Below, in pieces: positions 15,003 to 57,753 of a DNA stretch of 64,000 bases. Below the pieces are notes generated by a model. It ran no database searches and was not told the DNA's origin. It saw nothing but the letters and a program-made list of their open reading frames with translations. How positions within the stretch are numbered: the stretch's first letter is position 1; the number at the start of each line of letters is the position of its first letter. A program made the translations under genes and the position numbers. The stretch spans positions 181,226-245,225 of IMG/VR virus record IMGVR_UViG_3300047095_000752, one strand, 5' to 3'.

Positions 15003-15015
15003 AGACAAATGATTA
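15003..15015 (+). promoter_or_regulatory. phage promoter class B variant (AGACAAAT)
   Basis: GACA-N6-TA upstream of nrdJ. Confidence 0.4.
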
Positions 15016-15045
15016 TCATACAAAAAACACAGGAGTTTAATTTTT

Positions 15046-17031
15046 ATGAGTCGTGACGAAATGAATGAATGGATCTTCCCAATTAAAGAACGCTTTAAAC
15101 TAAGTGAAAAGTTTCTAGAAGATTTCATAGATAAAGAACCGAATTGGGGTCCACTGGGTAAATTAACATACAAGAGAACATATGCTGCCCGTGTAGAGGG
15201 CGAAGATCGCACCGAAGAATGGTTTGAAACCGTAAAGCGAGTCGTAGAGACATGTTACACGATTCAATTAAATCATTGTAAAAATTTAAGACTCCCTTGG
15301 AAAGCACATACAGCACAAAAGTCCGCCCAAGAAATGTATACTCGGATGTTTACTTTTAAGTTTATTCCTCCGGGGCGCGGACTTGCTAATATGGGTGATG
15401 TTATTTTTAAACGTGGATCTATGGGGTTATTCAATTGCTCTGCGGTATCCACTAACAGCACAAATTTCTCAGATCCATACGTTTTCATGATGGACGTTTC
15501 AATGTGTGGAGTGGGATGTGGATTTGATACAGAAGGATCCGGTAAATTCAAATTCGTAACACCAAAAACAACAGATAAGCCACATATAGTGGAAGACTCT
15601 CGTGAAGGGTGGTGTGAGATCCTCCGAGTTGTTCTTGAATCATATGTTGGTAAAGAACACTTACCTACTAATATTGATTATTCTCAGATCCGAAAGATTG
15701 GATCTCCTATCGTAACATCTGGCGGCACTGCTCCCGGTCCAGAACCTTTAATTAATTGTATAAATAAAATTCAAGAAATAATGAATAAACGAATTGACTA
15801 TGATATTTCATCTAGTGATATTGTTGATCTTATGAATATTATTGGAGTGTGTGTTGTAGCTGGCGGGAAAAGGCGCACAGCCCAGATAGCCTTTGGACAT
15901 TACAACGATCAAGAATATATTTCATTGAAGGATCCGGATCTGCACCAAGAAGAATTAATGACCCACCGTTGGGCGTCAAATAATAGCATCTATGCTCAAG
16001 ATGGAATGGATTACACCAATATTATTAATACAATTAAAAAGTCTGGCGAACCCGGAATTCTTTATAAACATCGTATGCAAAATTATGGTCGTTTGAAAGA
16101 TGGGTATCAAGAAGGCATTGATGGTAAGGCTACACTGCTTAATCCATGCGGTGAAATTTCGCTGGAGAGTGAAGAACTCTGCAATATAGCGGATGTCTTC
16201 CCGGCGCACCATAGTTCCTTCGAAGATTTTAAACGTAGTCTCAAATTTGCATTTCTATATTGCAAGTCGGTCACGCTCGTACCTACACATTTAACCACAA
16301 CAAATTCGAAAATCCTAAAGAACCGCAGAATTGGAATCTCTCAGTCTGGGATCGTGCAAGCAATCCAAAAGCACGGTACAACCGAATACTTCCGTTGGTG
16401 CGATGAAGGATATCAATACCTCAAAAACTTGGATAAAAAATATTCAGACTGGCTATGTATCCAGAAAAGCATTAAGATTAGCACGGTTAAGCCGAGCGGA
16501 ACGACATCACTTCTGTGTGGGTCTACGCCGGGGATTCATTTTGAACACTCCGAATATTATATCCGTCGAATTCGGATTGAAGAAACCAACGAACAATTGA
16601 TTCAATCGGTTAAAGATGCTGGCTATAAGTGGGAAGTATCCGCTTATGGTGATCGTTCCATAGTATTTGAAATACCCGTCAAGGCTGAGAACTTCTATAA
16701 AGGGAAGTCGGACGTTTCGGTTTGGGAACAAATGCAACTTGGATCTAAGATTCAATCAATTTGGGCGGATAATAGCGTTTCACAGACAGTGCACTTTACC
16801 AAAGACGAATCCCTCTATCTTAAAAATGTAATTGAAATGTACGAAGATCAGTTGAAGACCGTATCATTTCTACCCCTGTCGGATCACGGATATATACAAG
16901 CACCGTATGAGTCAATAACCAAGGATCAGTACGAAGAAATGAGCAAGAATATAATCGCAATAAACTTTAAGTTTAAGAATACACAAGACACCATCGAGAA
17001 ATTCTGTGATGGTGATAAGTGTATGATCTAA
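15046..17031 (+). CDS. nrdJ: class II (adenosylcobalamin-dependent) ribonucleotide reductase, monomeric RTPR type
   Basis: TYKRTY, PPGRGL, FNC, NPCGEI, RRIG, VKPSGT, C-terminal CDGDKC. Confidence 0.93.
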   Translation: MSRDEMNEWIFPIKERFKLSEKFLEDFIDKEPNWGPLGKLTYKRTYAARVEGEDRTEEWFETVKRVVETCYTIQLNHCKNLRLPWKAHTAQKSAQEMYTRMFTFKFIPPGRGLANMGDVIFKRGSMGLFNCSAVSTNSTNFSDPYVFMMDVSMCGVGCGFDTEGSGKFKFVTPKTTDKPHIVEDSREGWCEILRVVLESYVGKEHLPTNIDYSQIRKIGSPIVTSGGTAPGPEPLINCINKIQEIMNKRIDYDISSSDIVDLMNIIGVCVVAGGKRRTAQIAFGHYNDQEYISLKDPDLHQEELMTHRWASNNSIYAQDGMDYTNIINTIKKSGEPGILYKHRMQNYGRLKDGYQEGIDGKATLLNPCGEISLESEELCNIADVFPAHHSSFEDFKRSLKFAFLYCKSVTLVPTHLTTTNSKILKNRRIGISQSGIVQAIQKHGTTEYFRWCDEGYQYLKNLDKKYSDWLCIQKSIKISTVKPSGTTSLLCGSTPGIHFEHSEYYIRRIRIEETNEQLIQSVKDAGYKWEVSAYGDRSIVFEIPVKAENFYKGKSDVSVWEQMQLGSKIQSIWADNSVSQTVHFTKDESLYLKNVIEMYEDQLKTVSFLPLSDHGYIQAPYESITKDQYEEMSKNIIAINFKFKNTQDTIEKFCDGDKCMI

Positions 17032-17812: not shown

Positions 17813-17893
17813 TATCGGTATCGTTTGCATATATCCTTCATGTATGGTACACTTCATATACAATACTCACCACAACACAACGGGACCCAACCA

Positions 17894-18748
17894 ATGAGTT
17901 TTTTTCGTTACCCCGGCGGCAAGTCGAAGCTAAGAACCAAAATTGTATCTAAATTAAATGATATGGCTGGAGACTTAGATTTGGAGTACCGGGAACCTTT
18001 CTTTGGGGGTGGTAGTATAGGACTACAATACCTAGAAAAATCAAAAAATAATAAAGTGTGGATTAATGATTTAGACTTGGGTATTTATTGTCTATGGGTG
18101 TCAGTGTTTAGATATCCAGAGAAACTTAAAGAGAATGTTTTAAAATTTACTCCAACCGTAGATGCATTTTACTCATTCAAAAACGATTTAACTAGAGACT
18201 GTAAATTAATTGATATTGATACTGTTGTAAATTTTGGATTCAAAAAACTAGCGATACATCAAATATCATACTCTGGATTGGGTACAAAATCAGGTGGACC
18301 ATTAGGTGGGCAATCCCAACTTTCAGATTATAAGATTGACTGCCGATGGTCACCTAAATATATTTGTAAAAAAATAGATAAACTTAATAAACAGTTTAAA
18401 AGATATAGTTTAAGATTTTCAGGAGTAGATTTTTCCGAAGTTATACTGGAAGATACTAAGGATGCTATTATTTATCTAGATCCACCATATTTTGTAAAGG
18501 GCAATGATTTATATCAGCACGGATTCAACACTGAAGATCATATACGCCTAGCAAATTGTTTAAAGAATACAAAACATAAATGGTTATTGTCGTATGATGA
18601 TTGTGATGAAATACGAGATTTATATAGCTGGGCAACCATAGAAGAACTTGATGGTGTGAGTTATAGTATAACAGCACTTAAAGATAAAGACTCGGGTAAA
18701 AGAACTAGCAGACAAAAAACCGAATTATTAATATCGGCGGGTTATTAA
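17894..18748 (+). CDS. DNA adenine methyltransferase (Dam/D12 class)
   Basis: RYPGGKS, EPFFGGGS, IND, YLDPPY, WLLSYDD; likely start ATG 17894. Confidence 0.9.
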   Translation: MSFFRYPGGKSKLRTKIVSKLNDMAGDLDLEYREPFFGGGSIGLQYLEKSKNNKVWINDLDLGIYCLWVSVFRYPEKLKENVLKFTPTVDAFYSFKNDLTRDCKLIDIDTVVNFGFKKLAIHQISYSGLGTKSGGPLGGQSQLSDYKIDCRWSPKYICKKIDKLNKQFKRYSLRFSGVDFSEVILEDTKDAIIYLDPPYFVKGNDLYQHGFNTEDHIRLANCLKNTKHKWLLSYDDCDEIRDLYSWATIEELDGVSYSITALKDKDSGKRTSRQKTELLISAGY

Positions 18749-19772: not shown

Positions 19773-19842
19773 GTTATATCCCTTTTATGTGAAACTTTGA
19801 TATCCCCATCAAGTCACACAGAAGTTATGGGAATATAATTTA

Positions 19843-19862
19843 CAATTATTAATATATATAAT
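19843..19862 (-). promoter_or_regulatory. phage promoter class A
   Basis: ATTATATATAT TAATAAT TG. Confidence 0.7.
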
Positions 19863-20340: not shown

Positions 20341-20395
20341 ACCGTTACCCTTTCGATGTTTAATGTTGTATTATAGAATATACATACTCTATCTT

Positions 20396-20415
20396 CGTTA
20401 GTTTATATATATAAT
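20396..20415 (-). promoter_or_regulatory. phage promoter class A
   Basis: ATTATATATAT AAACTAA CG. Confidence 0.65.
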
Positions 20416-22560: not shown

Positions 22561-22617
22561 GCTCTAACCTCCACTCGTCATAATTAACCGCAGAAAAATA
22601 AAACAGAAGTATAACTC

Positions 22618-22637
22618 CAATAATAAATATATATAGT
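22618..22637 (-). promoter_or_regulatory. phage promoter class A
   Basis: ACTATATATAT TTATTAT TG; heads the paralogue/CARF operon. Confidence 0.7.
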
Positions 22638-22650
22638 TAAATAAACGTCG

Positions 22651-22663
22651 GGACAAATGTGTA
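22651..22663 (+). promoter_or_regulatory. phage promoter class B (GGACAAAT)
   Basis: GGACAAATGTGTA upstream of the 22686 gene. Confidence 0.6.
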
Positions 22664-22685
22664 TATACTTAAAAGGAGATTTTAT

Positions 22686-22972: not shown

Positions 22973-24169
22973 ATGTCTAATAATCTTAAACCGATAATGT
23001 TCTGCACACAACCATGTATGGAGATATTCGATTATATAAATCCAAATACCATTGACACGATACATCTATATATAGATTTAAAAAATTCATCGACCAACTT
23101 ATTTATACCAGATGTAGTACAAGAAATAGTAGAGACAAGTCGCCGAATGGGTAAGTCAGTTGAAAGTTCTATTTTTCAATCTATTATATTGACTTGCTCG
23201 AACTGGATAAGTGCTGCTCGAAGCCGTGGGTTTAATTGTAAGATAATCATATGCAATGATAAAGGCAGGTCCGAATACCATACAAAACTAAATCCATTAT
23301 ATAAAAAGAATAGAAAAATCACAAATGTATTGATGGAACATTATAGTGAAGAAATGGATCAGATTAAGACCCGCAACTGGGATTTCGCTGAGAAGATATG
23401 TGCAAAATTAAATAATATACATTTTATTAATATTAATTTCTTAGAAAGTGATTTTTTACCTTATTATTTAATAACTCGATATTTCAACGAATCGCCAAAT
23501 GTATATCATATCGTATCATCATGTGATAAGGATCACTTTCAATTATTAAATAAACCCAATACAATAATGTTCTCACGCAAATCAGGCACTACAACCATAT
23601 TAGATAAACAATCGTATTTAAGTAAATTTTTAAAGATTAATAAAGCCAGCGTTAAATCACAATCCAAATGGATCGATATAATGTCTAAAGTAAATCCAGA
23701 ATATATTGTATTAATAATGGCTATGTGCGGGGACGTATCCGATAACGTATTTGGTATACCTAGAATTGGTGATAAAACTGCATTAAAAATGATATCAGAT
23801 CATGATGTTGTAAACGAACTAATTGGTACGGTGGATGAACTTGAAGATAGATTATATAATGGTGGAAAAGTAATTCTAGATAAGCCTGATTTATATGATA
23901 GTTTAGATAATAATTGGAAATTAGCTGTAGATAATAATGACTTACTCACCAAAGCATATAAACAAATAAGCTACGAATCGCTATCAAGATGGCTTGATAA
24001 AACTGACATGATTAATGTTAAAGTTCCTGCTCGTAAAGCGATTGATGATAATATTAATAAACCATTCTATGTTTATAACGAAACTCACAAAGAAAATTTT
24101 ATCAAAAAAATAAAAGAATTAATACACGACTTTCACTTGAACGATTCTGATATTTACAATTTATTTTAA
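22973..24169 (+). CDS. 5'-3' exonuclease / T4 RNase H-like (FEN family)
   Basis: YID, YKKNR, ESD, SCDKD, GDVSDNVFGIPRIGDKTA (H3TH). Confidence 0.85.
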   Translation: MSNNLKPIMFCTQPCMEIFDYINPNTIDTIHLYIDLKNSSTNLFIPDVVQEIVETSRRMGKSVESSIFQSIILTCSNWISAARSRGFNCKIIICNDKGRSEYHTKLNPLYKKNRKITNVLMEHYSEEMDQIKTRNWDFAEKICAKLNNIHFININFLESDFLPYYLITRYFNESPNVYHIVSSCDKDHFQLLNKPNTIMFSRKSGTTTILDKQSYLSKFLKINKASVKSQSKWIDIMSKVNPEYIVLIMAMCGDVSDNVFGIPRIGDKTALKMISDHDVVNELIGTVDELEDRLYNGGKVILDKPDLYDSLDNNWKLAVDNNDLLTKAYKQISYESLSRWLDKTDMINVKVPARKAIDDNINKPFYVYNETHKENFIKKIKELIHDFHLNDSDIYNLF

Positions 24170-24172
24170 TCT

Positions 24173-24218
24173 AAAAAACACGCTACCGGGATATCTGCCG
24201 GTAGCGTGTTCTTTTTTA
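24173..24218. terminator. bidirectional intrinsic terminator
   Basis: AACACGCTACCGG/CCGGTAGCGTGTT flanked by A- and T-runs. Confidence 0.8.
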
Positions 24219-24222
24219 GTTC

Positions 24223-24633
24223 TTATGCTTTCTTTCCTTTCTGGATTGCTTCGAGGACAATCCCGGTTGAAAGGACCGCGAACAATATCACGGTCTGCAC
24301 CATAGCCGCCCCAGCCACTGCAGTTAGGCAGTAGGGGGATTCGTTCAACTTGTAGGACATGGCGATGATCGCCAGTCCCGCTACGACGAGGGAAATAACC
24401 GCCCGGAGGCGGATGTGATTTTCCCACATGTAGCGCGTCCGCTCATGTGGCTCCGACCACCTCTGATTGATAATCAGTACCCAAAGCGCCGCTGTTGTTC
24501 CGGCGACACATGATACCACCGGGATGCTGATGTTGTTGAGTGGTGCGAAATACGCCGCCCCGTAGATTGCAGCCTCTCCAATGATAGCAGCGATTAGCAT
24601 AAAAGGCATTAAAGCCTTCCGATCTTCAAACAC
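24223..24633 (-). CDS. GC-rich multi-pass membrane protein
   Basis: about four hydrophobic helices; GAAGGAG RBS. Confidence 0.7.
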   Translation of the reverse strand: MFEDRKALMPFMLIAAIIGEAAIYGAAYFAPLNNISIPVVSCVAGTTAALWVLIINQRWSEPHERTRYMWENHIRLRAVISLVVAGLAIIAMSYKLNESPYCLTAVAGAAMVQTVILFAVLSTGIVLEAIQKGKKA

Positions 24634-24663
24634 GATTTTACTCTCCTTCCAAGAGGTATTATA

Positions 24664-24981
24664 CTATTTCCCGAACATCGCCCCCATCATCCGACCCGCC
24701 GTCGCCAATCCCATCACCGTATTTTTAATCTCCTCTATTTTGGGTCTAAGACCCGATGCCTTGAAGCGGAGCGCGTCAACAATGACGCCCACCACAATCA
24801 AGGTAACAACGCCACATATCAGATAGGTCGGGGCGGCGAGCGCCTTCATAGCACCCACCGCGAGGAAGCCCACCATGTAGGCTTCCTTGTTCCCCCCGGT
24901 CTGGATTCCTTTCCAGACCGGGGTAACGAATGCTCGGGTGAGGGACCCAATCCTTTTGAGTCCCTTTACGATGGGGTTCAT
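24664..24981 (-). CDS. GC-rich membrane protein
   Basis: ATG 24981 in ATGA overlap with the upstream gene; hydrophobic core. Confidence 0.65.
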   Translation of the reverse strand: MNPIVKGLKRIGSLTRAFVTPVWKGIQTGGNKEAYMVGFLAVGAMKALAAPTYLICGVVTLIVVGVIVDALRFKASGLRPKIEEIKNTVMGLATAGRMMGAMFGK

Positions 24982-25316
24982 GTGCAAGCCCCAACCCGTG
25001 CACCCACGGACTGGGCGAGGTACCATGCCGCGTAGACGGCGATGGCGGGGATGAACCACAAGAGGCTACACCCCGTCACCACGAGGTCTAGAATCTGACC
25101 GGCCTTGTGGTCTACGGTCCCCTTCCTCTCAATCGCGAGCATGATACCCATGCTCACGAAACTTCCCGTGATCGCCACAGCGGCAATCGTGGGGAAGATG
25201 GTGCCGACAGCACACCAACCAATAAGGCTGATGGCGTCGGCGGTGACTGGCGACCTCTCAAGGAAGTCAAGACACTTCCCGATGGTCACCTGAAGGTGAA
25301 GTTTGAGTTTACCCAT
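24978..25316 (-). CDS. GC-rich membrane protein
   Basis: AAAGGA RBS; hydrophobic helices. Confidence 0.65.
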   Translation of the reverse strand: MGKLKLHLQVTIGKCLDFLERSPVTADAISLIGWCAVGTIFPTIAAVAITGSFVSMGIMLAIERKGTVDHKAGQILDLVVTGCSLLWFIPAIAVYAAWYLAQSVGARVGACT

Positions 25317-25349
25317 AATATATCCTTTCTTGGAGATGTTTTTGTTCAG

Positions 25350-25796
25350 TTATACCGCCACACAACCGACGCGGGCGGGACGCTCACCCATAAAGCTATT
25401 ATTACGGATGGTGGATAAAATCTTCTCACCGATAATGTAAGTGGCGAGGGCGGTGATGACACGGAGTGTAAAACCGAGTAGCACACCCACCACCATAAGC
25501 TGCAACCCAACCAACCAGATGGTCAGTTTGCCTAGCACCGCATAACCGGCGAAGCGGGCAATACCCCCTTCGATGACGACCGTCAGTATCGTCTTCAACG
25601 AGGGCTTAGAGACGAGCTCAATCGCGGAGCATACAAGCACCACACCACCAATGGCGGTGAGAGCGACTGGGGCGGCGACGAGACCCATCGCCATCCCACC
25701 TACACCCACAACAACGGACGCCACAGGGGCGAACTTCACGCCGAAGTTGAGGGCGCGGACGATGATATTCTTGACATTGGATACGATGCTTTTCAT
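25350..25796 (-). CDS. GC-rich membrane protein
   Basis: first gene after class A promoter; very hydrophobic. Confidence 0.7.
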   Translation of the reverse strand: MKSIVSNVKNIIVRALNFGVKFAPVASVVVGVGGMAMGLVAAPVALTAIGGVVLVCSAIELVSKPSLKTILTVVIEGGIARFAGYAVLGKLTIWLVGLQLMVVGVLLGFTLRVITALATYIIGEKILSTIRNNSFMGERPARVGCVAV

Positions 25797-25869
25797 GGTA
25801 TTACCCTTTGATGTTTAGACTATATGAAACCACCATTCAATCCGCATAGATCGATGATAGTATTCTTTA

Positions 25870-25889: not shown

Positions 25890-25938
25890 GAAAAATCAAC
25901 AAAAAAAGACCCCATAAATATGAGGTCAAAATGTTAAA

Positions 25939-27366: not shown

Positions 27367-27379
27367 GGACAAATTAATG
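27367..27379 (+). promoter_or_regulatory. phage promoter class B
   Basis: GGACAAATTAATG upstream of the neck gene. Confidence 0.6.
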
Positions 27380-27411
27380 AAAGTATATTAGTTTAAAGGA
27401 GATATATTAAA

Positions 27412-29028: not shown

Positions 29029-29036
29029 GGACAAAT
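29029..29036 (+). promoter_or_regulatory. phage promoter class B
   Basis: GGACAAAT upstream of 29073. Confidence 0.55.
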
Positions 29037-29072
29037 TTAAGTAAATTTAACTTTTAATGAAGGATTTTATAA

Positions 29073-31239: not shown

Positions 31240-31295
31240 GACATACCTTCCATTATGCCACCTATTCTTAGAATTAGGGGCGTTAGTTGTAAATT

Positions 31296-31315
31296 CAATA
31301 GTTTATATATATAGT
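31296..31315 (-). promoter_or_regulatory. phage promoter class A
   Basis: ACTATATATAT AAACTAT TG. Confidence 0.7.
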
Positions 31316-31401: not shown

Positions 31402-31414
31402 GGACAAATGAGTG
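31402..31414 (+). promoter_or_regulatory. phage promoter class B
   Basis: GGACAAATGAGTG upstream of the LigD-PE/GT operon. Confidence 0.55.
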
Positions 31415-31484
31415 TAAAGAGGTTAAAATAAACAAGAAGATTTTATAAAATGGTTTAATTTAAAAATATTAAAGGAGAATAACT

Positions 31485-38551: not shown

Positions 38552-38620
38552 GGTATTTCTCCCTACCACGTTACACATCCCACCACCATTTCACAATGAA
38601 ATTGGCTAGTGGTTTGTTTA

Positions 38621-38640
38621 CACTTCTCTATATATATAAT
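38621..38640 (-). promoter_or_regulatory. phage promoter class A
   Basis: ATTATATATAT AGAGAAG TG. Confidence 0.7.
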
Positions 38641-38674: not shown

Positions 38675-38687
38675 GGACAAATGTATA
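38675..38687 (+). promoter_or_regulatory. phage promoter class B
   Basis: GGACAAATGTATA upstream of 38702. Confidence 0.6.
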
Positions 38688-38701
38688 AAAGGACCTAAAT
38701 A

Positions 38702-42648: not shown

Positions 42649-42756
42649 GGGCTAACACCCCCTTTATTTTTTTTTGTTTAATTAATTTACGGTTGACAAA
42701 TTTATAGAATATATGGTAGTATTTATTATATATTTTAACTTGAAGGATACTAAATA

Positions 42757-44782: not shown

Positions 44783-47101
44783 ATGCAAATTGTAAAGACT
44801 ATGCAATTGACAAATCAGTGGGTTGTTGTGATAATCAACTCCATGCAGGATGTGGTTAATGAAATTGGTAGATTATCGGGTAGTTCAACATACCTGAATA
44901 ATGTTAATCTATGGGCAAGTACTAGATATACAGCGACACCAAACTACAATGCCCGTAACGCCTTCCGTACCGTCAGAGACCAATACATTGCCCAAGCCCG
45001 TATCAATGTAGGTGAACAAGCATTAGACGACGCCACATCATTCACACCAAATCCCCTAGAACAAGGCCGGGTACTCGTTGGAATCAATGAGGATATTACA
45101 ACTGGCGGCCCTCTTGTCGAATACGTACATTACTGTTACTTGAAGGTACCACTTGATACAACTTCAATCTCCGTATTCGGACAAACAACCTCCGTAATCC
45201 TGAATGATGACCAAATCTCCAGAGCAATCAAGATAAATCAGGTAGGCTATCTGCCCTCATCACCAAAGAAGTATGCCTATATAGGAGCGCACATTTATGA
45301 TCACGGTCCGCTTACCATCGATGCGACAAGTTTTACTATTCATGATAGTAGCTCAAACGCAACTGTGTATACCGGATCGGTCACACTAAGAGATTCAAAT
45401 ACAATTCTTGCAAGTGGAAAACCATTGACGGGTGAAAACGTCTATCAGATGGACCTCTCGGATTTTTCAGGTATTGGTGAATTTTACATTAAAGTTCCCG
45501 GCGTGGGAAGATCTTGGAATTTCAAACACACACTCGATGTTTATGGGGAAGTATTCTACACTACAACCCGTGGTCTTTATCATCAACGTTGTGGATTACC
45601 TCTAAAAGCTCCTTATACTAATTGGCTACGCCCAACCTGCCATACGAAACCAGTCAAGGAATCTAAATTCGTTTCGTTCCCAAGTCAATTTACAGATCGT
45701 CCCGCTAACTATGAACGGTTTGATGTTTACGGTGCGACCACAGATCATAGCTCATTCAACGTGACCGCAGCGGGCGGCTGGCATGACGCGGCAGACTGGG
45801 ATCGTAATACTCAGCACTACACTTGTGTTTTTGATCTTCTTTACGCTTATGAAATGGATCCTGATAAATTCACTTCAAATCAATTAAATATCCCGGAATC
45901 ACCAACCGCTTACCCAGATATATTGAAAGAGGCGGAATACGGTTTACAGTGTTGGAAGAGATCTATGGACTCGCGGGGCGGAGTTTCCGGGATGATCGAG
46001 ACGAATACGCATCCGACACGCGGAGTTGACGGCAATTACGCATACTCGGTTAGAACTCGCTGGGATTCACTACTATTAGCCGCCGCAGCAGCCATGATGG
46101 CGGAATTAATCGCGCCATTTGACATGGCTAAATCGAATACTTGGAAATGGTATGCTATTAAAAGTTATAACTTCGGAAACAATCCCGCTAATAGCTTAGG
46201 AACTGTGACAATCCCCGCGAAGACGAACCGAGGACTTGGTACATCTTACACCTATACCTTCACGGAAAAAGACACGCATATTGAACCGCTCCTTGCTCAC
46301 GCTAAATCCAGATTGTATAAGTTAACAAGCGATTCCACCTATCTAACTGGACTTGATACTTTAATTGGAAAATTAAGAGCACCATTTAAATGGCCATATA
46401 CAAATCGTGATTACAGCGGATGGATTAACTATAGTTGTCTCGATCACGTGTCAAATCCAACTACCAAAGCTAATTATATTAAACTTTGGTTTACAAATTA
46501 TGCTGATGCGTTACTACCCCACGTTGCAGCCCAGCCTTATAGATGTACTTGGCCAGTTACAAAAGACTTCTGGTTGGATTGGGGAGCGAGTTGCATGACC
46601 AATGAGAACAGATCCCTGCTACTTTCATACAAACTCACGACTCAATCCAAGTATTTAGAAGCTGCAATTTTAAACATGGACTATATGCTCGGCGCAAATC
46701 CACAGGGTATGGTATACACAACTGGTTTAGGGCAGTCGTATCCTGCAATTTTACAGCACGAAACGAGTCAGTTTGATGGCATCGATGATCCAGTACCCGG
46801 AATTGCCTTGTACGGTCAAACCGGCGGCTCACACAACACACTACGCACAACAGTCTGGCAATCCCCTTCTCCGACGGGACAGGTGGAATTCAAGACGCCC
46901 GTTGTTCCTTTATGGAGATCTTGGTCCGCTCACCCAACCTTAAATACAAGACAGTGTGAATTTACGATCCAAGAAACAATGTCCTGCAATATCTTCTCGG
47001 CTGCAGCCTTAATGTCGGAGGGGTGGAGTCCTTCAAATACACTTAAAACCAAGACTCCAAAGACACTGGCGAATTTACCCGGATATTATTACTTACCGTA
47101 A
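44783..47101 (+). CDS. glycoside hydrolase family 9 with Ig-like CelD_N domain
   Basis: INQVGYLP, LYHQRCG, GGWHDAAD, DYMLGANPQGMVYTTGLG, CEFTI catalytic Glu. Confidence 0.88.
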   Translation: MQIVKTMQLTNQWVVVIINSMQDVVNEIGRLSGSSTYLNNVNLWASTRYTATPNYNARNAFRTVRDQYIAQARINVGEQALDDATSFTPNPLEQGRVLVGINEDITTGGPLVEYVHYCYLKVPLDTTSISVFGQTTSVILNDDQISRAIKINQVGYLPSSPKKYAYIGAHIYDHGPLTIDATSFTIHDSSSNATVYTGSVTLRDSNTILASGKPLTGENVYQMDLSDFSGIGEFYIKVPGVGRSWNFKHTLDVYGEVFYTTTRGLYHQRCGLPLKAPYTNWLRPTCHTKPVKESKFVSFPSQFTDRPANYERFDVYGATTDHSSFNVTAAGGWHDAADWDRNTQHYTCVFDLLYAYEMDPDKFTSNQLNIPESPTAYPDILKEAEYGLQCWKRSMDSRGGVSGMIETNTHPTRGVDGNYAYSVRTRWDSLLLAAAAAMMAELIAPFDMAKSNTWKWYAIKSYNFGNNPANSLGTVTIPAKTNRGLGTSYTYTFTEKDTHIEPLLAHAKSRLYKLTSDSTYLTGLDTLIGKLRAPFKWPYTNRDYSGWINYSCLDHVSNPTTKANYIKLWFTNYADALLPHVAAQPYRCTWPVTKDFWLDWGASCMTNENRSLLLSYKLTTQSKYLEAAILNMDYMLGANPQGMVYTTGLGQSYPAILQHETSQFDGIDDPVPGIALYGQTGGSHNTLRTTVWQSPSPTGQVEFKTPVVPLWRSWSAHPTLNTRQCEFTIQETMSCNIFSAAALMSEGWSPSNTLKTKTPKTLANLPGYYYLP

Positions 47102-47130: not shown

Positions 47131-47159
47131 TTGCCTTAACTCAGTTTCAATGGTATAAT
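47131..47159 (+). promoter_or_regulatory. sigma70-type promoter
   Basis: TTGCCT-17-TATAAT with TG extension. Confidence 0.6.
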
Positions 47160-47932: not shown

Positions 47933-47972
47933 TATTATCGACAAATATGTATAAACATTAGGATTTGATATT

Positions 47973-51172: not shown

Positions 51173-51308
51173 AAAGAGCTACCGACAGTCCTCCCCAGAG
51201 GGAGATACCATCAGTAGCAGGGAAATGGGGTAGTATAATATTCGTTGTATGGATGTCTCTCAGAGAAGAGACGCGGTATGCGTACAACTTTTGCCGTCCT
51301 TCGGACAT
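51150..51308 (-). CDS. 52-aa protein with hydrophobic C-terminus
   Basis: AAAGGAGG RBS, class A promoter upstream. Confidence 0.5.
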   Translation of the reverse strand: MSEGRQKLYAYRVSSLRDIHTTNIILPHFPATDGISLWGGLSVALFGFFCAL

Positions 51309-51391
51309 TCGTCCTCCTTTCGTTGATGCGGCTATAACTATCTTTGATGCTATATAGGTCCCGATATATTTTTCCTTTATAGTGTACCTAC

Positions 51392-51411
51392 CAATATTAA
51401 ATATATATAGT
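51392..51411 (-). promoter_or_regulatory. phage promoter class A
   Basis: ACTATATATAT TTAATAT TG. Confidence 0.7.
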
Positions 51412-51497
51412 GTTTGTCCGAAATTCGATTTGCATATCCCCGGATCTCGTGGTATAATTTGAGTACTAAAGAACATGGACACACCGGAGATTTAAAG

Positions 51498-53042
51498 ATG
51501 CTCTCAGAAAAAGTTATTAATACATGCTTTGATGTATGTGTTGCGACTCCCACCGATTACCCAAAATGTCGTGAATTATTTTCAGCAATATTTTCTATTT
51601 TCAATCATTATATTAAAAATACTCCTGTAGAAGAACGTCCTCTCAACTCCCGTATAAAAATTGAGTTCGTACATTATATTGCACGATTCCGGTTTAAAAC
51701 ACCTGAACAATTCTCAATTGAACGGATAAAGGAGATGACGGCAAAGGGTAAATACTCCGATTTATCTTGCTTGCTTCAGGTTAATCCCACTTATACATCA
51801 AGTGAAATAATTGATGAATTTCTGACAAAAACTATTATCCCCAAAAGAAAAGGATCCCACCTTGGGTCTAATATAATTGACCTTAAGCAAGCAATTGAAC
51901 ATTATGAAAATGATTCTTTTGAAGATTTGAATGATCTATTAGATACATTCGAGAATATCATCTCTCGTACCCACGTTGGGTTAAAAGAATTAAACCGCAT
52001 TGAATCAATATCTAAATCATCATGCTTAGATCTACTGAATGATGACTACAATAACGTCTTAGAACGATTTAGGATGCAGTGCACGAATAATATTATTAAG
52101 TCCGGGTTTGATATTATCGATGAAACGCTCCCATTCGGTGGATTTGAATCTGGTCGTGTTTATATCTTCGGCGGCGAAACTGGTGTTGGTAAATCCGTTA
52201 TGCTTCTCAATATTCTGGCAAATACAGTTAAAATGTATGCGGAATATATCAAGGATTGTATTGATGAAGACGAGATCAAAGCTTTAAAATCCAAGAAGAA
52301 ACAAGTACACTTATACATAACCGCAGAAAACTTAATTGATGAAAGCCTTATCCGGTATTATTGTGCCAGTACAGGTCGCTCCCATAATGAAGTCGTATTT
52401 GATATTAAGAATGTACCTAACTTCAATCCTAAAAAAGAAATTACTGAGGATTTAGTACGGACGAACTCCAATATCTTATTTTATTATGTACCCGCCCGTT
52501 TAGTTAAGTTGTCTGAAATTGAAGCTATTATCGATGAGACTATTCAAAAGTATGAATTAAAGTCTGTTTACATAGATTATCTAGATCTTATCCGTAGCGG
52601 CACTGAAACTGAACTCCGTCACGAACTGGGCGAAGTTACCTCCGGGTTTAAACGGTTCGCTATCCTCAATAATGTACCTGTGATTACAGCCACCCAGTTG
52701 AATCGCTCAGGGTATAATAACAGCAAGGCATCATTCACAAGCATGTCAGAATCCATGGAGAAGGCAAACGACACGGACTTTCTGGCATACTTACAACGGA
52801 CAGATAAAGATGAAACCCGATTTATGAATGAGTTCGGGGCTATTATAACTGGTACAAAAGTAAGACTTTCCATCCTAAAAAATCGTGGTGGTCCTACCGG
52901 GAAGTCAACTGAACTGCTATTAGAAAAGACCTTAAATGGTAAAAATATATTCAATTACCAGTTTAAAGAAGTTCCTGACTATAAAGAAATTGATGCTGAA
53001 ACCGACCACATAGCATTAGCAGATTATGGTATGGATGTTTAA
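51498..53042 (+). CDS. replicative helicase (DnaB / T4 gp41 family)
   Basis: SGFDIID, GETGVGKS, YITAE, YIDYLDLI, TATQLNR, SES, LKNRGG. Confidence 0.92.
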   Translation: MLSEKVINTCFDVCVATPTDYPKCRELFSAIFSIFNHYIKNTPVEERPLNSRIKIEFVHYIARFRFKTPEQFSIERIKEMTAKGKYSDLSCLLQVNPTYTSSEIIDEFLTKTIIPKRKGSHLGSNIIDLKQAIEHYENDSFEDLNDLLDTFENIISRTHVGLKELNRIESISKSSCLDLLNDDYNNVLERFRMQCTNNIIKSGFDIIDETLPFGGFESGRVYIFGGETGVGKSVMLLNILANTVKMYAEYIKDCIDEDEIKALKSKKKQVHLYITAENLIDESLIRYYCASTGRSHNEVVFDIKNVPNFNPKKEITEDLVRTNSNILFYYVPARLVKLSEIEAIIDETIQKYELKSVYIDYLDLIRSGTETELRHELGEVTSGFKRFAILNNVPVITATQLNRSGYNNSKASFTSMSESMEKANDTDFLAYLQRTDKDETRFMNEFGAIITGTKVRLSILKNRGGPTGKSTELLLEKTLNGKNIFNYQFKEVPDYKEIDAETDHIALADYGMDV

Positions 53043-53053
53043 TTTAATAATTA

Positions 53054-53066
53054 GGACAAATAATCG
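53054..53066 (+). promoter_or_regulatory. phage promoter class B
   Basis: GGACAAATAATCG. Confidence 0.6.
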
Positions 53067-53134
53067 TAAAGCCATCCATAGGCTTGTATACCAACCCCAA
53101 CATATAAATTTAATTAATTTTAAGGAGAATTAAT

Positions 53135-54025
53135 ATGTATAGAAATAGTAAGAAAGATCGCACCGAATTCTTTCGCCAGTTGAATGAATCCTTCATCGAA
53201 GATGAAATTTTTACCGAAGATAATGTAGACCTTAAGAGTCTCAGTAATTACAGTAACCCCGGTCTAGACATCATCACTTGGCGTGGCGAAGGCGAAATGC
53301 CCACCACAGTCAAGGGTGCCGACATGGACGATATCGCCAAGAAGATTGCTGCCCCCTACGGTGAAGATCTTAAGGCTACCGAAGTGTTCGAAGCTGTATT
53401 TGATGAAGTTTTTGGTAAGGGTGAAAAGAGTTACCGCCCCTTTGAAGTACTTGAAGATGATTTTGACATGGCTTCTGTTATTCAACGTGATAACGATTAC
53501 CATGAATTCATCCGCGAGGAAGCCGACGAAGACAAGGAAGAAGACTCTAAAGACGATAAGTCATTTTCCGCTGATATGGATAAATTGAAGCAGACCAACG
53601 ACGAATCATCCTATGATGAAGATGACGACGATGATGACGATGACGATGAGGAGGACTCCCTCAATGAAAGTTTTTTAGGGCTGAACTTAGACGAAGATTA
53701 TCAAGACGATTATCAAGACGCTCTTAATGAAGATGCTAACGACTATGATATGGGTGATGTAGCTCCTTTATCATTACTTGAAAACAACGAACTTGATATC
53801 GTAAATCTCGACACTCTGCTTGAACAAACTCAATTAATTGAAGATGAGTTAGACCAAGTATCCAATTATGACAGCGTTTTAGAAAATGATTCTGATTTTT
53901 CCGACGTTTTTGATTCCGATAACGAAATGATTTCTGAAGATACATTTGATGAATCCTTCGATATGGAAGACCTGTTAGAAGATGGTACCGACTACTCCGA
54001 GTATTTAGACGAAGATATCCTTTAA
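53135..54025 (+). CDS. extremely acidic protein, probable prohead core/internal protein
   Basis: poly-Asp tract, many L/I-x-E motifs, class B promoter, near portal. Confidence 0.6.
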   Translation: MYRNSKKDRTEFFRQLNESFIEDEIFTEDNVDLKSLSNYSNPGLDIITWRGEGEMPTTVKGADMDDIAKKIAAPYGEDLKATEVFEAVFDEVFGKGEKSYRPFEVLEDDFDMASVIQRDNDYHEFIREEADEDKEEDSKDDKSFSADMDKLKQTNDESSYDEDDDDDDDDDEEDSLNESFLGLNLDEDYQDDYQDALNEDANDYDMGDVAPLSLLENNELDIVNLDTLLEQTQLIEDELDQVSNYDSVLENDSDFSDVFDSDNEMISEDTFDESFDMEDLLEDGTDYSEYLDEDIL

Positions 54026-54050
54026 TTTAAAAAAGTTGTACGTTAAACCT

Positions 54051-54090
54051 GAAATTCCAGATCATTTAAAAATGGTCTGGAATTTTTATT
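54051..54090 (+). terminator. intrinsic terminator
   Basis: AAATTCCAGATCAT/ATGGTCTGGAATTT plus T-run. Confidence 0.7.
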
Positions 54091-54105
54091 AGATAGGGAT
54101 CTACT

Positions 54106-55576
54106 ATGTTACTATATAACGCTAAACAATTTATACAAGAATTTGTAATGGGTAGTCACTTTTCTGGTACTATGTTTAGTACAATACCTGAATCTAAGCA
54201 GGGTAAAAAGATTAATTTAAAGAACAATTTAACTGAATATAAACCGGTCAAGAAAAGACTCACCCATGATAAAAAGACATTACCTACCAAATCTATAGAT
54301 AAGGAAAGTTTTTCAAATCATGAGGTAGATGTTAAAGGAAATAAATAAATGGACTCTGACCATGACAACGATTATTTAGTAGATATAAAATCCAAAAACT
54401 TTACATTACAAACGAAATATGGTAAAATCATCCGAACACCAATAAAGTTCTATATTAAAGCTGGAGATAAACTATACTGGGACATGCAAATAACCATGTC
54501 TGGTATAAAGGACTTTAATATAGTGAAGTTGGTTAAGAATGTAATTGAACCGACCCAAACCGTGGAAACAAAGGTTGTTGAGGAGTTAGTGCGCCCCTCA
54601 ACAAAACATAAAAGGGAATAAATAATGAAGACTAAGTATACGTTTGTATTGAATAACAACTCTAAAATCGTTTTGACTGAGGAAGGTGGACCTAAGCTAT
54701 CATCGGATGACATTGATAAAATAATGAATTCTGAAAATATTATTGTGGTATCAACAGCCACAGATTCTTTGAAGATAAGACCCTCCCAAATTAGCGCAAT
54801 TCATGTAACAACTGCTGATGGAAATAATAAAAAGAATTCCACCCAGAATGAAGAACACTTATATCATAATGAACACGATGCTGAAAATGATGCGACTACT
54901 GATGCTTTTTATGATATTAAGGATGATTCGTCAGATCTATATGAAGATGATATTATTGTTGAGAATGACGACGTAAGCAATGATAACATTGAGCTTGTAT
55001 CAAATATTGAGTTTGATGATAATGATGATTTGGACTCAATTTTAACGATGTCCCATGAAGAAGATTTAGATGAATCTACAACTTAATACACTTATTGAAA
55101 ATATTGATGTTATATTAATATTATTCTTTTTAGCAATATTTTTTAAATATATAACAAATTTAATAGAAGATATAAAAAATGAATATAGGCGTAAGTTATT
55201 ATTTTCTCGTGCAGAATATGTAATTACAATATATGAGAATAAAAGACATATAGCATTCAACTCTTTATATAAAAGAAAACTTTCCGTCCTATATACAAGT
55301 AACACTACCACAAATAAATCAGAACAAATTTTAAAGTATGAGAAGACTTTTATTCATATTGTTCGAGAATTATGTGGACCCACCATATTTGAAGATCTAA
55401 GGGATATATATGGTGACACCAATTCAATCGTACGAGATTTAAGTGAGTATTATTCCACAAAGATAATCACAATTGAAGCTGGTAACTTTGAAATGGAACT
55501 TAAAGAAAAATTCGCAAATGATCTAATAGACGATGATGATCCGGATTCAAAACCCCAAACTATCTTTATAAGATAA
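54106..55576 (+). CDS. four hypothetical genes (54106-54348, 54349-54621, 54625-55086, 55070-55576; last has an N-terminal TM helix)
   Basis: coupled ORFs upstream of portal. Confidence 0.55.
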
Positions 55577-55588
55577 AGGCTTTTATAA

Positions 55589-57703
55589 ATGGCAACTAAC
55601 AATAGTGGTATTAAAAGAATAAGCAAAGCATTAGCTGATATTCGATTAAACTTAATATCAAGTCGTGATTATAGTAAAATCGACTCTGAAATTGATAGAT
55701 CTATCGATAAGCTCACGGTTAGTGACTTAAATGTAAATACTATTAATTACGCAGAAACTATGAAGCAGTACATGACTAAAAGTATTGATACTAACTCTAT
55801 CAATAAAGAAGTAACCGCTAATATCTTAAATACACCTGAGACATTAGCTCGTTTTGGTCGTTATTCTAATGCTGAAGAAGTTATTTATAATATACCACAA
55901 TGTTCCCGCGCCCTAAAGGTATTAGCATCCGGTATTCTGTCTCCTGACAATGTAACTAAGACTAGCTTAAGTATTCTAGCTAGCGAAGATTCTGATGCGG
56001 ATAATGTCAAAGAAATTTTAAATAATATTAAATTAATTAATAAAGAAATAAAATTTGAAGATTTCTTGGATACAGCCATTACCGAAACTCTAAAGTATGG
56101 TGATAAGTTTATCGAAATTTGCTCATATAAGTCTAAAGAAATCCCAATCACACAATCCATGTACCTTCAAGAAAGAATCATATATGAAAGCACAGGACGT
56201 GTAGGGGAGCCGCCTCAAAAAATGAGGACAAAGATCCATAACGTCCAATATGATGAACCAACCCAGTTCTTAAATGAAGATGATGTACAGTATTTTAATA
56301 AATTCAATAAAAAGGTTTATTTGAATATTGTTGAAGATGGTAGTCCAAATGAACTTAATTTCTCACAGTCTTTACTTCATGAAAAACGGTCTCGTCGTAA
56401 TAGAAAGGCTAAAGAAGAAAAGCTTTTCGAGAATATTGAAGAAGTACGTCTAATTCAACACGATCCCCGTAGAGTAGTAAAACTCCAGACCGAAAGATTT
56501 AAGGTTAACCTTGGATATTTAATTCTACCCGAAGGTTCCGAGGATATGGCGGGACTTGGTATGGTAGGCATGAGTTCGACTGCTGGCGGTGGATATTCTT
56601 CTGGTGGTGCGACTCCAATTGCAAGTGGACTTCAAAATGATGTATTTAAGGGTGTCGAAGGTCTTTATGTAGATCTTATTAAAATGATTAAGCGCCACGT
56701 TAATTCAAATGACCTTAAAGTTAATAAAAAAGAAATGAAGGAAATGTTAGCTCGTCTTGTAAAGGACCTTGAAACTGACTCTGATAAGTCTGAAATCAAG
56801 ATTCGATATGTACCACCAGAACGGATGGAGCATTTCATGATTAATGATCGAATCCACTTTCCTTATGGTGAAGGTATATTTGAAAAGACGATGCACGCCG
56901 CCAAGGAATTAATCGCCCTTAAAACTGCAGTAACAGTACGTAGAATTACAGATGCTGTAGATAAGAGAGTTATTTATATTGAATCTACAATGGCGAGAAA
57001 TTCAAGAAATATTATGACCTCATTTAGAGAGGCTCTTCGTAAGCGTAAGTTTACAATGAACAGTTTATCTAATATTAGTACTATCCCATCTCAAATGACT
57101 AACTTTGAAGATTATATTTTAACTCAGAAGAATGGTAAGAGATCTGTTGAATTCGATACTATTCCAACTACAAGTAGCATTAGAGATATTGCCGAAGAAC
57201 TTAAATTCTTCCGTGATGAATTGGTATCAAGCTTGGACGTACCTCCAGCATTTATTGGTATTGAAGAAAATGTAAATGGTAAGAGTACCCTTGCCCACGA
57301 ATCCGCTTTATTTGCCGAGACAATTTTAAGTTATCAAAAAGTATTTAATATACACATTTTTAGATTTTTTAATAACTTACATAAATTATTATATGGTCGC
57401 TCCGTCCCCGATACAATCAACATTACATTACAGCCTCCTAAGATGTTAGCAATTAGTACAGAATTAGAACATCTTGAAACTGTATCTCGTATTATGGAAC
57501 TTTCTACTTCTCTTGGTATTGAGAAAGAAACCCTCCGTAAGCGTTATGTCCCCGTCGATTGGGAAGAGGAAGAAGACGTTAAGGTTAAAGATCAGCTTAA
57601 TAAGCGTGGTGAAGCCTCTAAGAAATCAGACGATGATATATTTGGCGGCGGTATGATGGGTGGAATGGGTGGAATGGGTATGGGTGGTGCACCAATGATG
57701 TAA
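55589..57703 (+). CDS. portal protein (T4 gp20-like)
   Basis: LKYGD.F, PYGEGIFE, RRIT.A.DKRVIYIE, EDYIL, ELKFFRDEL.SSLDVP. Confidence 0.88.
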   Translation: MATNNSGIKRISKALADIRLNLISSRDYSKIDSEIDRSIDKLTVSDLNVNTINYAETMKQYMTKSIDTNSINKEVTANILNTPETLARFGRYSNAEEVIYNIPQCSRALKVLASGILSPDNVTKTSLSILASEDSDADNVKEILNNIKLINKEIKFEDFLDTAITETLKYGDKFIEICSYKSKEIPITQSMYLQERIIYESTGRVGEPPQKMRTKIHNVQYDEPTQFLNEDDVQYFNKFNKKVYLNIVEDGSPNELNFSQSLLHEKRSRRNRKAKEEKLFENIEEVRLIQHDPRRVVKLQTERFKVNLGYLILPEGSEDMAGLGMVGMSSTAGGGYSSGGATPIASGLQNDVFKGVEGLYVDLIKMIKRHVNSNDLKVNKKEMKEMLARLVKDLETDSDKSEIKIRYVPPERMEHFMINDRIHFPYGEGIFEKTMHAAKELIALKTAVTVRRITDAVDKRVIYIESTMARNSRNIMTSFREALRKRKFTMNSLSNISTIPSQMTNFEDYILTQKNGKRSVEFDTIPTTSSIRDIAEELKFFRDELVSSLDVPPAFIGIEENVNGKSTLAHESALFAETILSYQKVFNIHIFRFFNNLHKLLYGRSVPDTINITLQPPKMLAISTELEHLETVSRIMELSTSLGIEKETLRKRYVPVDWEEEEDVKVKDQLNKRGEASKKSDDDIFGGGMMGGMGGMGMGGAPMM

Positions 57704-57740
57704 CATTTGGGCTTTATTATAATAACGATATAATGTGCAA

Positions 57741-57753
57741 GGACAAATAAATG
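57741..57753 (+). promoter_or_regulatory. phage promoter class B
   Basis: GGACAAATAAATG. Confidence 0.6.

What the first reader, a model, noticed from the sequence alone, without database searches (positions are those of the whole stretch)
15003..57753. Second phage promoter class GGACAAAT (GACA-N6-YR) in front of structural/late genes
Seen: GGACAAAT lies 16-75 nt upstream of starts at 22651, 27367 (neck), 29029, 31402, 38675, 53054 and 57741 (scaffold), with variants at 15003 and 47939. Eight of nine have Y-R exactly 6 nt after GACA. At 22618-22663, 31296-31414 and 38621-38687 class A and class B motifs are arranged back-to-back as divergent pairs. Established: the AR9 non-virion RNAP late promoter is AACA-N6-TR, whereas T4 late promoters are TATAAATA. 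Inference: a T4-like head module is transcribed by a non-T4 late machinery.
Basis: partly seen in the sequence, partly recalled or inferred. Interest (0 to 1): 0.7.

Follow-up and report, generated by a model that had tools for sequence, protein, structure and literature searches.

The report
Late promoter of phage-encoded RNA polymerase
GGACAAAT followed four bases later by a purine is a real, conserved promoter of an uncultivated lake jumbo phage, most likely read by the phage's own non-virion RNA polymerase and a sigma-like subunit like those of Bacillus phage AR9, but in a phage that probably has ordinary thymine DNA.

Summary
GGACAAAT is the most over-represented 8-mer in the intergenic DNA of the 245-kb phage contig. 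Of 22 exact copies, 19 are intergenic (P about 6e-15), and all 19 point at a same-strand gene 16-139 nt downstream. The full element is GGACAAAT-N3-T-R-T-A. Position 13 is always a purine, which fits a start site. This matches the published AR9 late promoter, A(-11)ACA-N6-T-R(+1), base for base. The core sits at orthologous gene junctions in metagenomic relatives whose portals are 92% to 36% identical, while the flanks diverge; relatives near 30% carry AGAACA there.

The contig encodes two multisubunit RNA polymerases and no gp55 or sigma-70 homologue. One early gene folds as a full-length structural homologue of AR9 gp226, the sigma-like specificity subunit (Z 20.4). Class B precedes the virion-polymerase genes, the portal-scaffold-protease module, baseplate and virion-protein homologues, and also some DNA-metabolism genes.

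A ThyX gene suggests thymine DNA, unlike uracil-containing AR9.

Verdict: a new, information-rich variant of the AR9-type late promoter. Start sites and the enzyme-promoter pairing remain untested.

The parts
57741..57757 (+). Class B promoter between the portal and the scaffold-like gene. Core is GGACAAAT; the predicted +1 is G at 57753.
   Evidence: The element and everything downstream of it are 100% conserved in the relative with a 92% identical portal (L031), while the upstream TATAAT-like stretch is not. GGACAAAT or GGACAAAC sits at the same junction in L021, L023 and L028.
53054..53070 (+). Class B promoter between DnaB and a conserved 296-aa gene that heads the operon ending in the portal. 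Predicted +1 is G at 53066.
   Evidence: The orthologous junction carries GGACAAAT, GGACAAAA, GGACAAAG or GGACAAAC in L031, L021, L022, L023 and L028, and AGAACA in L029 and L030.
38675..38691 (+). Class B promoter before the 136-aa and 865-aa genes. Predicted +1 is A at 38687. A TGTTATAAT (class C-like) abuts it at 38666-38674.
31402..31418 (+). Class B promoter before the operon 31485-37751. Predicted +1 is G at 31414.
29029..29045 (+). Class B promoter before the 290-aa gene at 29073. This is the one window site with A-G instead of Y-R at positions 12-13.
27367..27383 (+). Class B promoter before the virion-protein gene 27412-28134. Predicted +1 is G at 27379.
   Evidence: The gene matches phrog_18911, a virion structural protein family, and AR9 virion protein g112.
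22651..22667 (+). Class B promoter before a 68-aa gene and a 5'-3' exonuclease gene (22973-24169). Predicted +1 is A at 22663.
47939..47955 (+). Class B variant CGACAAAT-N3-TATAAA before the operon that contains the UvsX-like recombinase.
   Evidence: PWM score 14.8. CGACAAAT is conserved in L031.
15003..15019 (+). Class B variant AGACAAAT, 36 nt before the RNR large-subunit gene. A sigma-70-like TGGTACAAT lies 70 nt further upstream at 14933.
   Evidence: The same AGACAAAT variant, with TATATAAA downstream, precedes the capsid operon in L031.
42694..42710 (+). Weak candidate class B variant, TGACAAAT-N3-TAGA, 55 nt before the 358-aa gene.
   Evidence: PWM score 12.3. Uncertain.
12884..12891 (-). 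Exact GGACAAAT inside a gene, without Y-R at positions 12-13. Probably not a promoter.
58653..58660 (+). Exact GGACAAAT inside the scaffold-like gene, without Y-R. Probably not a promoter.
22614..22635 (-). Class A (early-type) promoter, the divergent partner of the class B site at 22651.
   Evidence: It resembles AR9's annotated early promoter.
31292..31313 (-). Class A promoter, the divergent partner of the class B site at 31402.
38617..38638 (-). Class A promoter (subtype ending AGAAGTGTAAA), the divergent partner of the class B site at 38675.
55589..57703 (+). Portal gene (T4 gp20 type) in the operon that starts at the 53054 promoter.
   Evidence: Pfam PF07230.
57765..59858 (+). Scaffold-like 434-aa gene (labelled by position only) and the prohead protease gene, downstream of the 57741 promoter.
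   Evidence: phrog_207; AR9 g114.
3031..3810 (-). ThyX thymidylate synthase gene, the basis for inferring thymine-containing DNA.
   Evidence: PF02511, E 4e-40.

Best explanation
GGACAAAT-N3-T-R(-T-A) is the middle/late promoter of this jumbo phage. It is most likely recognised by the phage's non-virion multisubunit RNA polymerase. That enzyme would consist of beta (contig 51248-54286), beta' (55285-57993) and a gp226-like sigma-like subunit (126498-127976); all three genes lie outside the window. By analogy with AR9, the G-A-C-A at motif positions 2-5 corresponds to promoter positions -11 to -8. There it would be read as the template strand 3'-CTGT-5' in a cleft formed by the sigma-like subunit and beta. 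Transcription would then start at the purine at motif position 13. The polymerase and its sigma-like subunit are made early, from class A (AR9 early-like) and sigma-70-like promoters. They would then switch on virion genes, the virion-polymerase genes and some DNA-metabolism genes. Shown here: the motif, its enrichment, orientation and conservation, the two polymerases, and the gp226 fold. Inferred: which enzyme reads the motif, the start site, the timing, and template-strand reading.
For: Enrichment, intergenic placement and co-orientation are established. The logo has eight invariant bases, then T12 in 15 of 19 sites, a purine at 13 in 19 of 19, T14 and A15, and nothing conserved upstream, so there is no -35 element. 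Y-R at positions 12-13 occurs in 16 of 19 sites against a background of 0.25 (P 1e-7). The register is identical to the AR9 late consensus (PMC7598289), and AR9 virion genes show [A/G]AACA-N6-T[A/G] upstream in 10 of 11 cases checked. The motif is conserved at orthologous junctions in six relatives and shifts to AGAACA in the most distant pair. In four cases on this contig, and in one relative, a hairpin plus U-run sits directly upstream, so the downstream gene needs a new start. The contig encodes two RNA polymerase sets. Set 1 beta' is closer to AR9 non-virion beta'N (1e-18 against 3e-10), and set 2 beta'N is closer to AR9 virion beta'N (2e-26 against 1e-13). Class B precedes both set 2 genes, and does so again in a relative whose sigma-like homologue is 45% identical. 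The early gene at 126498-127976 gives a model with pLDDT 82. Its best PDB matches are AR9 gp226 (Foldseek E 5e-8; Z 20.4 over 407 residues), phiKZ gp68 (Z 8.5), then bacterial sigma region 2 (Z 5-6). A strict class A promoter lies 61 nt upstream of that gene. Class A closely resembles AR9's annotated early promoter. Genes downstream of class B include homologues of AR9 virion proteins g213 and g112, baseplate wedge g232, the portal and the protease.
Against: No transcription start site or timing data exist; the only RNA evidence is one 170-nt metatranscriptome contig inside a gene. Position -11 is G, whereas AR9 strictly needs A (template U). ThyX suggests thymine DNA, which the AR9 enzyme cannot use (PMC9209446). 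The valine that AR9 uses to tell U from T is not conserved in the sigma-like homologue. The contig also carries 27 intergenic sigma-70-like promoters, so host polymerase probably takes part in the programme. Several downstream genes are not structural. Gene calls are my own heuristic. The contig is about 78% complete.
Confidence: 0.78

Rival explanations
1. The motif is a promoter for the host RNA polymerase, redirected by an unrecognised phage late factor as in T4 (gp55, gp33 and the clamp).
For: The element occupies about -12 to -5, close to where T4's TATAAATA sits (my own knowledge). The best sites continue into TATATAAA. The phage has a T4-like clamp loader and many sigma-70-like promoters, which implies the host polymerase is used.
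Against: No gp55 family match and no Sigma70_r2 match. The TATAAA-like part is degenerate while GGACAAAT is invariant. TATAAATA itself is not placed before head genes. A gp226-type subunit and a dedicated polymerase are encoded, and the register matches AR9.
Confidence: 0.07
2. The motif is not a core promoter. It is a site acting on DNA or RNA: an operator for a phage regulator, or an RNA processing or stability signal in the 5' leaders.
For: Twelve of the 19 sites lie between co-oriented genes, some only 2-12 nt after a stop codon, so they could be transcribed from upstream. The distance to the start codon varies.
Against: Seven sites lie in divergent regions that have no other shared element. 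Four sites, plus one in a relative, sit just after terminator-like hairpins. No consistent promoter lies upstream, and the TATAAT near 57741 is not conserved at 92% portal identity. The invariant purine at position 13 and the AR9 register are not expected for an operator.
Confidence: 0.08
3. The polymerase assignments are swapped: class B is read by the injected virion polymerase, and class A by the non-virion enzyme.
For: Nothing here measures timing or which enzyme reads which motif. Both beta homologues score better against AR9's non-virion beta than against its virion beta.
Against: Class A closely resembles AR9's early promoter, and class B matches its late one. The virion-type beta' and beta genes carry class B, while the sigma-like gene carries class A. 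Virion-protein genes carry class B.
Confidence: 0.04
4. The pattern is a chance or compositional artefact.
For: Within the window alone, 1 of 100 shuffles reached 9 copies.
Against: Genome-wide P is about 6e-15, orientation is consistent in 19 of 19 sites, the motif is depleted in coding DNA, and it is conserved across relatives.
Confidence: 0.01

Closest known systems
AR9 (PBS1-group) late promoter, A(-11)ACA-N6-T-A/G(+1), read by the non-virion polymerase with gp226
   Same: It has the same register (purine-A-C-A, six bases, T, then a purine) and no -35 element. It lies before virion and virion-polymerase genes. The genome encodes two multisubunit polymerases and a full-length gp226-fold protein expressed from an AR9-like early promoter.
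   Different: Position -11 is G, not A. Four more bases are fixed (G at -12, AAT at -7 to -5), so information content is much higher, and T-A follows the start. The DNA is probably thymine-containing (ThyX present). The beta and beta' genes are unsplit and much closer to bacterial ones. The U-discriminating valine is not conserved. Sequence identity to gp226 is about 13%.
phiKZ late promoter, T(-3)ATG(+1), read by the non-virion polymerase with gp68
   Same: Thymine-DNA jumbo phage with virion and non-virion polymerases and a sigma-like fifth subunit. The C-terminal domain of the protein found here matches gp68 (Z 8.5).
   Different: phiKZ has only a 4-nt motif at the start site and no -10-like element. 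Here a strong 8-nt element lies at about -12 to -5.
T4 late promoter TATAAATA with gp55, gp33 and gp45
   Same: A single -10-region element without a -35, placed before a T4-like head module.
   Different: No gp55 homologue, a different sequence, and the phage encodes its own polymerases.
Bacterial sigma-70 extended -10 promoters
   Same: The sigma-like subunit shares the sigma region 2 fold (Z 5-6). The contig separately carries genuine TTGc-N14-TGnTAYAAT promoters (class C).
   Different: Class B has no -35 and no TATAAT. By analogy with AR9 it would be read on the template strand.

Membership tests
AR9-type non-virion polymerase late promoter | A-C-A at -10 to -8, six bases, then T(-1) and a purine at +1 | tested here: met
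   ACA is present in 19 of 19 sites. Position 12 is T in 15 and C in 1 of 19. Position 13 is a purine in 19 of 19. The numbering assumes the start is at position 13.
AR9-type non-virion polymerase late promoter | A at -11 (an obligatory template-strand deoxyuridine) | tested here: not met
   G in all 19 strong sites; A, C or T only in the weaker variants.
AR9-type non-virion polymerase late promoter | Uracil-containing genomic DNA | tested here: inconclusive
   ThyX is present and ThyA absent, which suggests thymine DNA. The base composition of virion DNA cannot be read from sequence.
AR9-type non-virion polymerase late promoter | No conserved -35 element | tested here: met
   Information content is near zero from -24 to 0 relative to the motif start.
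AR9-type non-virion polymerase late promoter | Genome encodes non-virion beta and beta' plus a gp226-family specificity subunit | tested here: met
   polymerases; gp226 fold, Z 20.4.
AR9-type non-virion polymerase late promoter | Experimentally mapped late start sites, and initiation by the purified holoenzyme on the template strand | not testable with these tools
   Only one 170-nt RNA contig was found, inside a gene.
gp226/gp68 sigma-like subunit family (protein at contig 126498-127976) | Full-length two-domain fold of gp226, including the sigma region 2-like core | tested here: met
   Z 20.4 over 407 of 463 residues. The next unrelated Foldseek hit has E 0.19. Bacterial sigma region 2 matches at Z 5-6.
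gp226/gp68 sigma-like subunit family (protein at contig 126498-127976) | Conserved 2.1bis helix with the U-discriminating valine | tested here: not met
   The segment is alignable (SRxF...D..xW..xK) and is the most conserved part of the family, but V206 aligns with Y or F. That alignment rests on about 13% identity.
gp226/gp68 sigma-like subunit family (protein at contig 126498-127976) | Physical association with the non-virion polymerase core | not testable with these tools
   The complex prediction returned no verdict.
T4-type late promoter | TATAAATA at -10 and a gp55 late sigma factor | tested here: not met
   No phrog_234 match. TATAAATA is not positioned before head genes.
Sigma-70 promoter | -35 and -10 hexamers, or an extended -10 | tested here: not met
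   Class B has neither. A separate class C on this contig does.
phiKZ late promoter | TATG overlapping the start site as the only conserved element | tested here: not met
   Positions 10-13 are not TATG in most sites; the conserved block lies upstream of them.

The most novel reading that the evidence does not exclude
A clade of uncultivated freshwater jumbo phages uses an AR9-type, template-strand-reading sigma-like subunit on thymine DNA. The promoter would have adapted in two ways. The -11 template base, for which AR9 leaves no room for a 5-methyl group, has become cytosine. The element has also grown to eight fixed bases, replacing the specificity that uracil gives AR9. Transcription would then be shared among three polymerases, each with its own promoter class: host sigma-70 type, virion and non-virion.
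Probability: 0.4. Interest if true: 0.75.

Novelty: new variant of a known kind. Interest (0 to 1): 0.6.

Why it matters
A 2020 review states that middle and late promoters of polymerase-encoding jumbo phages cannot be predicted by bioinformatics, and that it is unclear what gives phiKZ's 4-nt late motif its specificity (PMC7598289). This phage clade has a late promoter strong enough to be read straight from the sequence, a gp226-like subunit, and probably thymine DNA. That makes a testable natural counterpart to the engineered V206G AR9 enzyme: how does template-strand -10 recognition work without uracil? It also gives a ready rule for annotating transcription units in a widespread group of uncultivated lake phages.

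Tried and rejected
- **Close relatives among isolates:** a megablast of the portal region against isolated phages found none. A single-protein scan of IMG/VR also found none.
- **RNA evidence:** two RNA runs held only a 170-nt contig inside the 296-aa gene, plus unrelated low-identity pieces. This gives no start-site information.
- **Sequence searches for a specificity factor:** AR9 gp226 by phmmer and tblastn and its PHROG family found nothing. That is expected, because gp226 and gp68 themselves share only 8-11% identity.
- **Other candidate sigma-like genes:**
  - Contig 61200-62492 looked DUF932-like.
  - Window 13529-14803 has only four homologues, and its model was unusable (pLDDT 43).
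  - Pfam and PHROGs gave nothing for several others.
- **Complex prediction:** the beta' N-terminal half with the sigma-like protein returned no verdict. This is not evidence either way.
- **AR9 beta residues R363 and K375:** these could not be aligned reliably to the phage's beta.
- **Exact 17-mer consensus scan of IMG/VR:** 21 single hits, consistent with chance.
- **Literature search for the 8-mer:** returned only primers.
- **An upstream TATAAT as the real promoter:** rejected, because its spacing varies and it is not conserved in the 92% relative.
- **PHROGs and Pfam on downstream genes:** no annotation for most genes after class B sites, so 'structural' rests on a minority of them.


Full report
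**What the window is.** The window is the last 64 kb of a 245,225-bp virus contig from lake-water metagenomes, estimated about 78% complete. No isolated phage is close. The portal's best matches in the phage collection are the AR9/PBS1 group of Bacillus jumbo phages, at about 23% identity. Many uncultivated relatives exist in metagenomes.

**The observation.**
- The window holds 9 exact GGACAAAT copies against 3.2 expected. Seven are intergenic on the + strand, and two lie inside genes.
- On the whole contig, 19 of 22 exact copies are intergenic, although intergenic DNA is only 12.4% of the contig by my own gene calls (P about 6e-15).
- GGACAAAT is the single most over-represented 8-mer in intergenic DNA (19 seen, 1.7 expected). 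Inside genes it is rarer than expected (3 seen, 8.7 expected).
- All 19 intergenic copies point at a same-strand gene. The implied leaders are 12-135 nt long.

**The full element.** Aligning the 19 sites gives G-G-A-C-A-A-A-T, three weakly T/A-rich bases, T (15 of 19), a purine (19 of 19; 11 A and 8 G), T, A, then A-rich sequence. Nothing is conserved upstream. Y-R at positions 12-13 occurs in 16 of 19 sites, against 0.25 in background intergenic DNA. An invariant purine at a fixed distance is what a transcription start looks like. The intragenic copies lack it. Weaker sites carry AGACAAAT (15003), CGACAAAT (47939), GAACAAAT or TGACAAAT.

**Conservation in relatives.**
- Contigs with portals 92%, 65%, 42%, 42% and 36% identical keep the same gene order: RecA-like, DnaB, a roughly 300-aa gene, portal, scaffold-like gene, protease, then a Gp23-type capsid gene.
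- These contigs carry GGACAAAT or GGACAAA[A/C/G] at the same two junctions, while the surrounding intergenic sequence differs.
- In the 92% relative, the stretch from the motif to the start codon of the scaffold-like gene is identical, whereas the TATAAT-like sequence just upstream has changed. In that relative, AGACAAAT followed by TATATAAA precedes the capsid operon, which lies beyond the end of our contig.
- Two relatives with about 30% identical portals have TTAGAACA[T/A]A at three such junctions, including the one before the capsid gene.
- In four cases on this contig, and in one relative, a hairpin plus U-run lies directly upstream of the motif. Transcription would therefore have to restart there.

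**The transcription machinery.**
- The contig has two sets of multisubunit polymerase genes. Both are much closer to bacterial beta and beta' (E 1e-60 to 1e-86) than to AR9's.
- Set 1 has unsplit beta and beta' genes separated by homing-endonuclease genes. Its beta' N-terminal part matches AR9 non-virion beta'N better than the virion one (1e-18 against 3e-10).
- Set 2 has beta plus a split beta'. Its beta'N matches AR9 virion beta'N better (2e-26 against 1e-13).
- Class B sits directly before both set 2 genes, and does so again in a distant relative.
- No gp55, Sigma70_r2 or gp226 homologue is detectable by sequence.
- A conserved 479-aa early gene (contig 126498-127976, 35 homologues, no Pfam family) gave a confident model (pLDDT 82). 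Its best structural matches are AR9 gp226 (Foldseek E 5e-8; Z 20.4 over 407 residues), then phiKZ gp68 (Z 8.5), then bacterial sigma region 2 (Z 5-6).
- A strict class A promoter lies 61 nt upstream of this gene.

**Class A.** All 17 strict copies on the contig, and all 10 loose copies in the window, are on the minus strand. It closely resembles the early promoter annotated in the AR9 record, AAATATATATTAT followed by TTGA.

**Comparison with what is known.**
- The AR9 late consensus is A(-11)ACA-N6-T-A/G(+1). It is read on the template strand by the non-virion polymerase with gp226 (PMC7598289; PMC9209446).
- Class B matches this base for base if motif position 13 is +1.
- In AR9, the template G at -9 is required, and -8 tolerates T. 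The pockets for -10 and -11 exclude the 5-methyl group of thymine.
- In this phage, -9 and -8 are unchanged. The -11 template base would be cytosine, which has no 5-methyl. The -10 base would be thymine if the DNA contains thymine, as the ThyX gene suggests.
- The segment equivalent to AR9's 2.1bis helix is the most conserved part of the new family, but it has Y or F where AR9 has the discriminating valine.
- These last points are inference. They are what makes the case interesting.

**What class B drives.** In the window it precedes the following:
- a small gene plus a 5'-3' exonuclease gene;
- a virion protein gene (homologous to AR9 g112);
- several operons of unknown genes, one ending in a PIN-PhoH gene and one in a GH9 hydrolase gene;
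- the operon ending in the portal;
- the scaffold-like and protease module.

Variants precede the RNR and UvsX operons. Elsewhere on the contig it precedes homologues of AR9 virion protein g213 and of baseplate wedge g232, a virion structural protein operon, and the virion-polymerase genes. 'Middle/late' describes this set better than 'structural'.

**Rivals and limits.** The main alternatives are a T4-like redirection of host polymerase, an operator or RNA-processing site, and swapped polymerase assignments. Each is possible but poorly supported (see the rival entries). The real gap is experimental. No start sites, timing or enzyme assays exist, most downstream genes are unannotated, gene calls are heuristic, and the contig is incomplete.

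Noticed in passing
window 51450-51458(+), 47151-47159(+), 14933-14941(+), 41733-41741(+), 38666-38674(+), 3843-3851(-): A third promoter class that looks like a canonical sigma-70 promoter: TTGc, about 14 nt, then TGnTAYAAT. There are 27 intergenic copies on the contig. They lie before DnaB, ThyX, RNR, the gene at 47192 and the non-virion beta' gene, and are conserved before DnaB and RecA in relatives. This suggests the host polymerase is used as well, unlike what is reported for AR9 and phiKZ.
   Followed up: partly
window 14854-14875, 19839-19860, 20392-20413, 22614-22635, 25866-25887, 28236-28257, 29946-29967, 31292-31313, 38617-38638, 51388-51409 (all minus strand): Class A promoters occur only on the minus strand and closely resemble AR9's annotated early promoter. 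There are two subtypes, one ending ATTATTGAA and one ending AGAAGTGTAAA.
   Followed up: partly
contig 51248-57993 (outside the window): The non-virion beta (1012 aa) and beta' (902 aa) genes are unsplit and far closer to bacterial subunits than AR9's four-piece enzyme. Homing-endonuclease genes sit beside and between them.
   Followed up: partly
contig 152262-152301 (outside the window): One gene has a class B promoter followed 22 nt later by a class A promoter on the same strand, like AR9's continuously expressed genes that carry both early and late promoters.
   Followed up: no
window 44783-47101: A 772-aa protein with a cellulase N-terminal Ig-like domain and a glycosyl hydrolase family 9 domain, in an operon downstream of a class B site. 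It may be a polysaccharide-degrading virion or lysis enzyme.
   Followed up: partly
window 17840-18748: A D12-class N6-adenine DNA methyltransferase gene, in the operon with RNR.
   Followed up: no
window 35451-37751: A PIN-PhoH fusion protein with a LAGLIDADG-like segment in the middle, which may be an intein or a homing-endonuclease insertion.
   Followed up: no
window 1361-2962, 7057-7587, 11963-12484, 34903-35415, 43838-44782: Many HNH or Hef-like homing-endonuclease genes, matching AR9's intron and free-standing endonucleases. More than a dozen occur across the contig.
   Followed up: no
window 24000-26000: A GC-rich island (0.49, against about 0.31-0.38 nearby) of small minus-strand ORFs. 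It has no family match, no tRNA and no Rfam hit.
   Followed up: partly
window 61172-64000: The contig ends inside a 942+ aa ORF. In relatives the Gp23-type capsid gene lies about 1 kb beyond this ORF, so the capsid gene is missing from this record.
   Followed up: yes
contig 86724-90781 (outside the window): In the class B operon that starts at contig position 90819, a 525-aa protein has a weak match to a phage RNA polymerase beta family (E 3e-4). It may be a further virion-polymerase piece.
   Followed up: no
window 53652-53821: A 170-nt contig from a freshwater metatranscriptome matches the 296-aa gene exactly. This is the only trace of RNA for this phage in the runs offered.
   Followed up: yes
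contig 169098-170087 (outside the window): A T4 gp44-type clamp-loader gene lies beside the primase homologue, so the replication module is T4-like even though late transcription is not.
   Followed up: no
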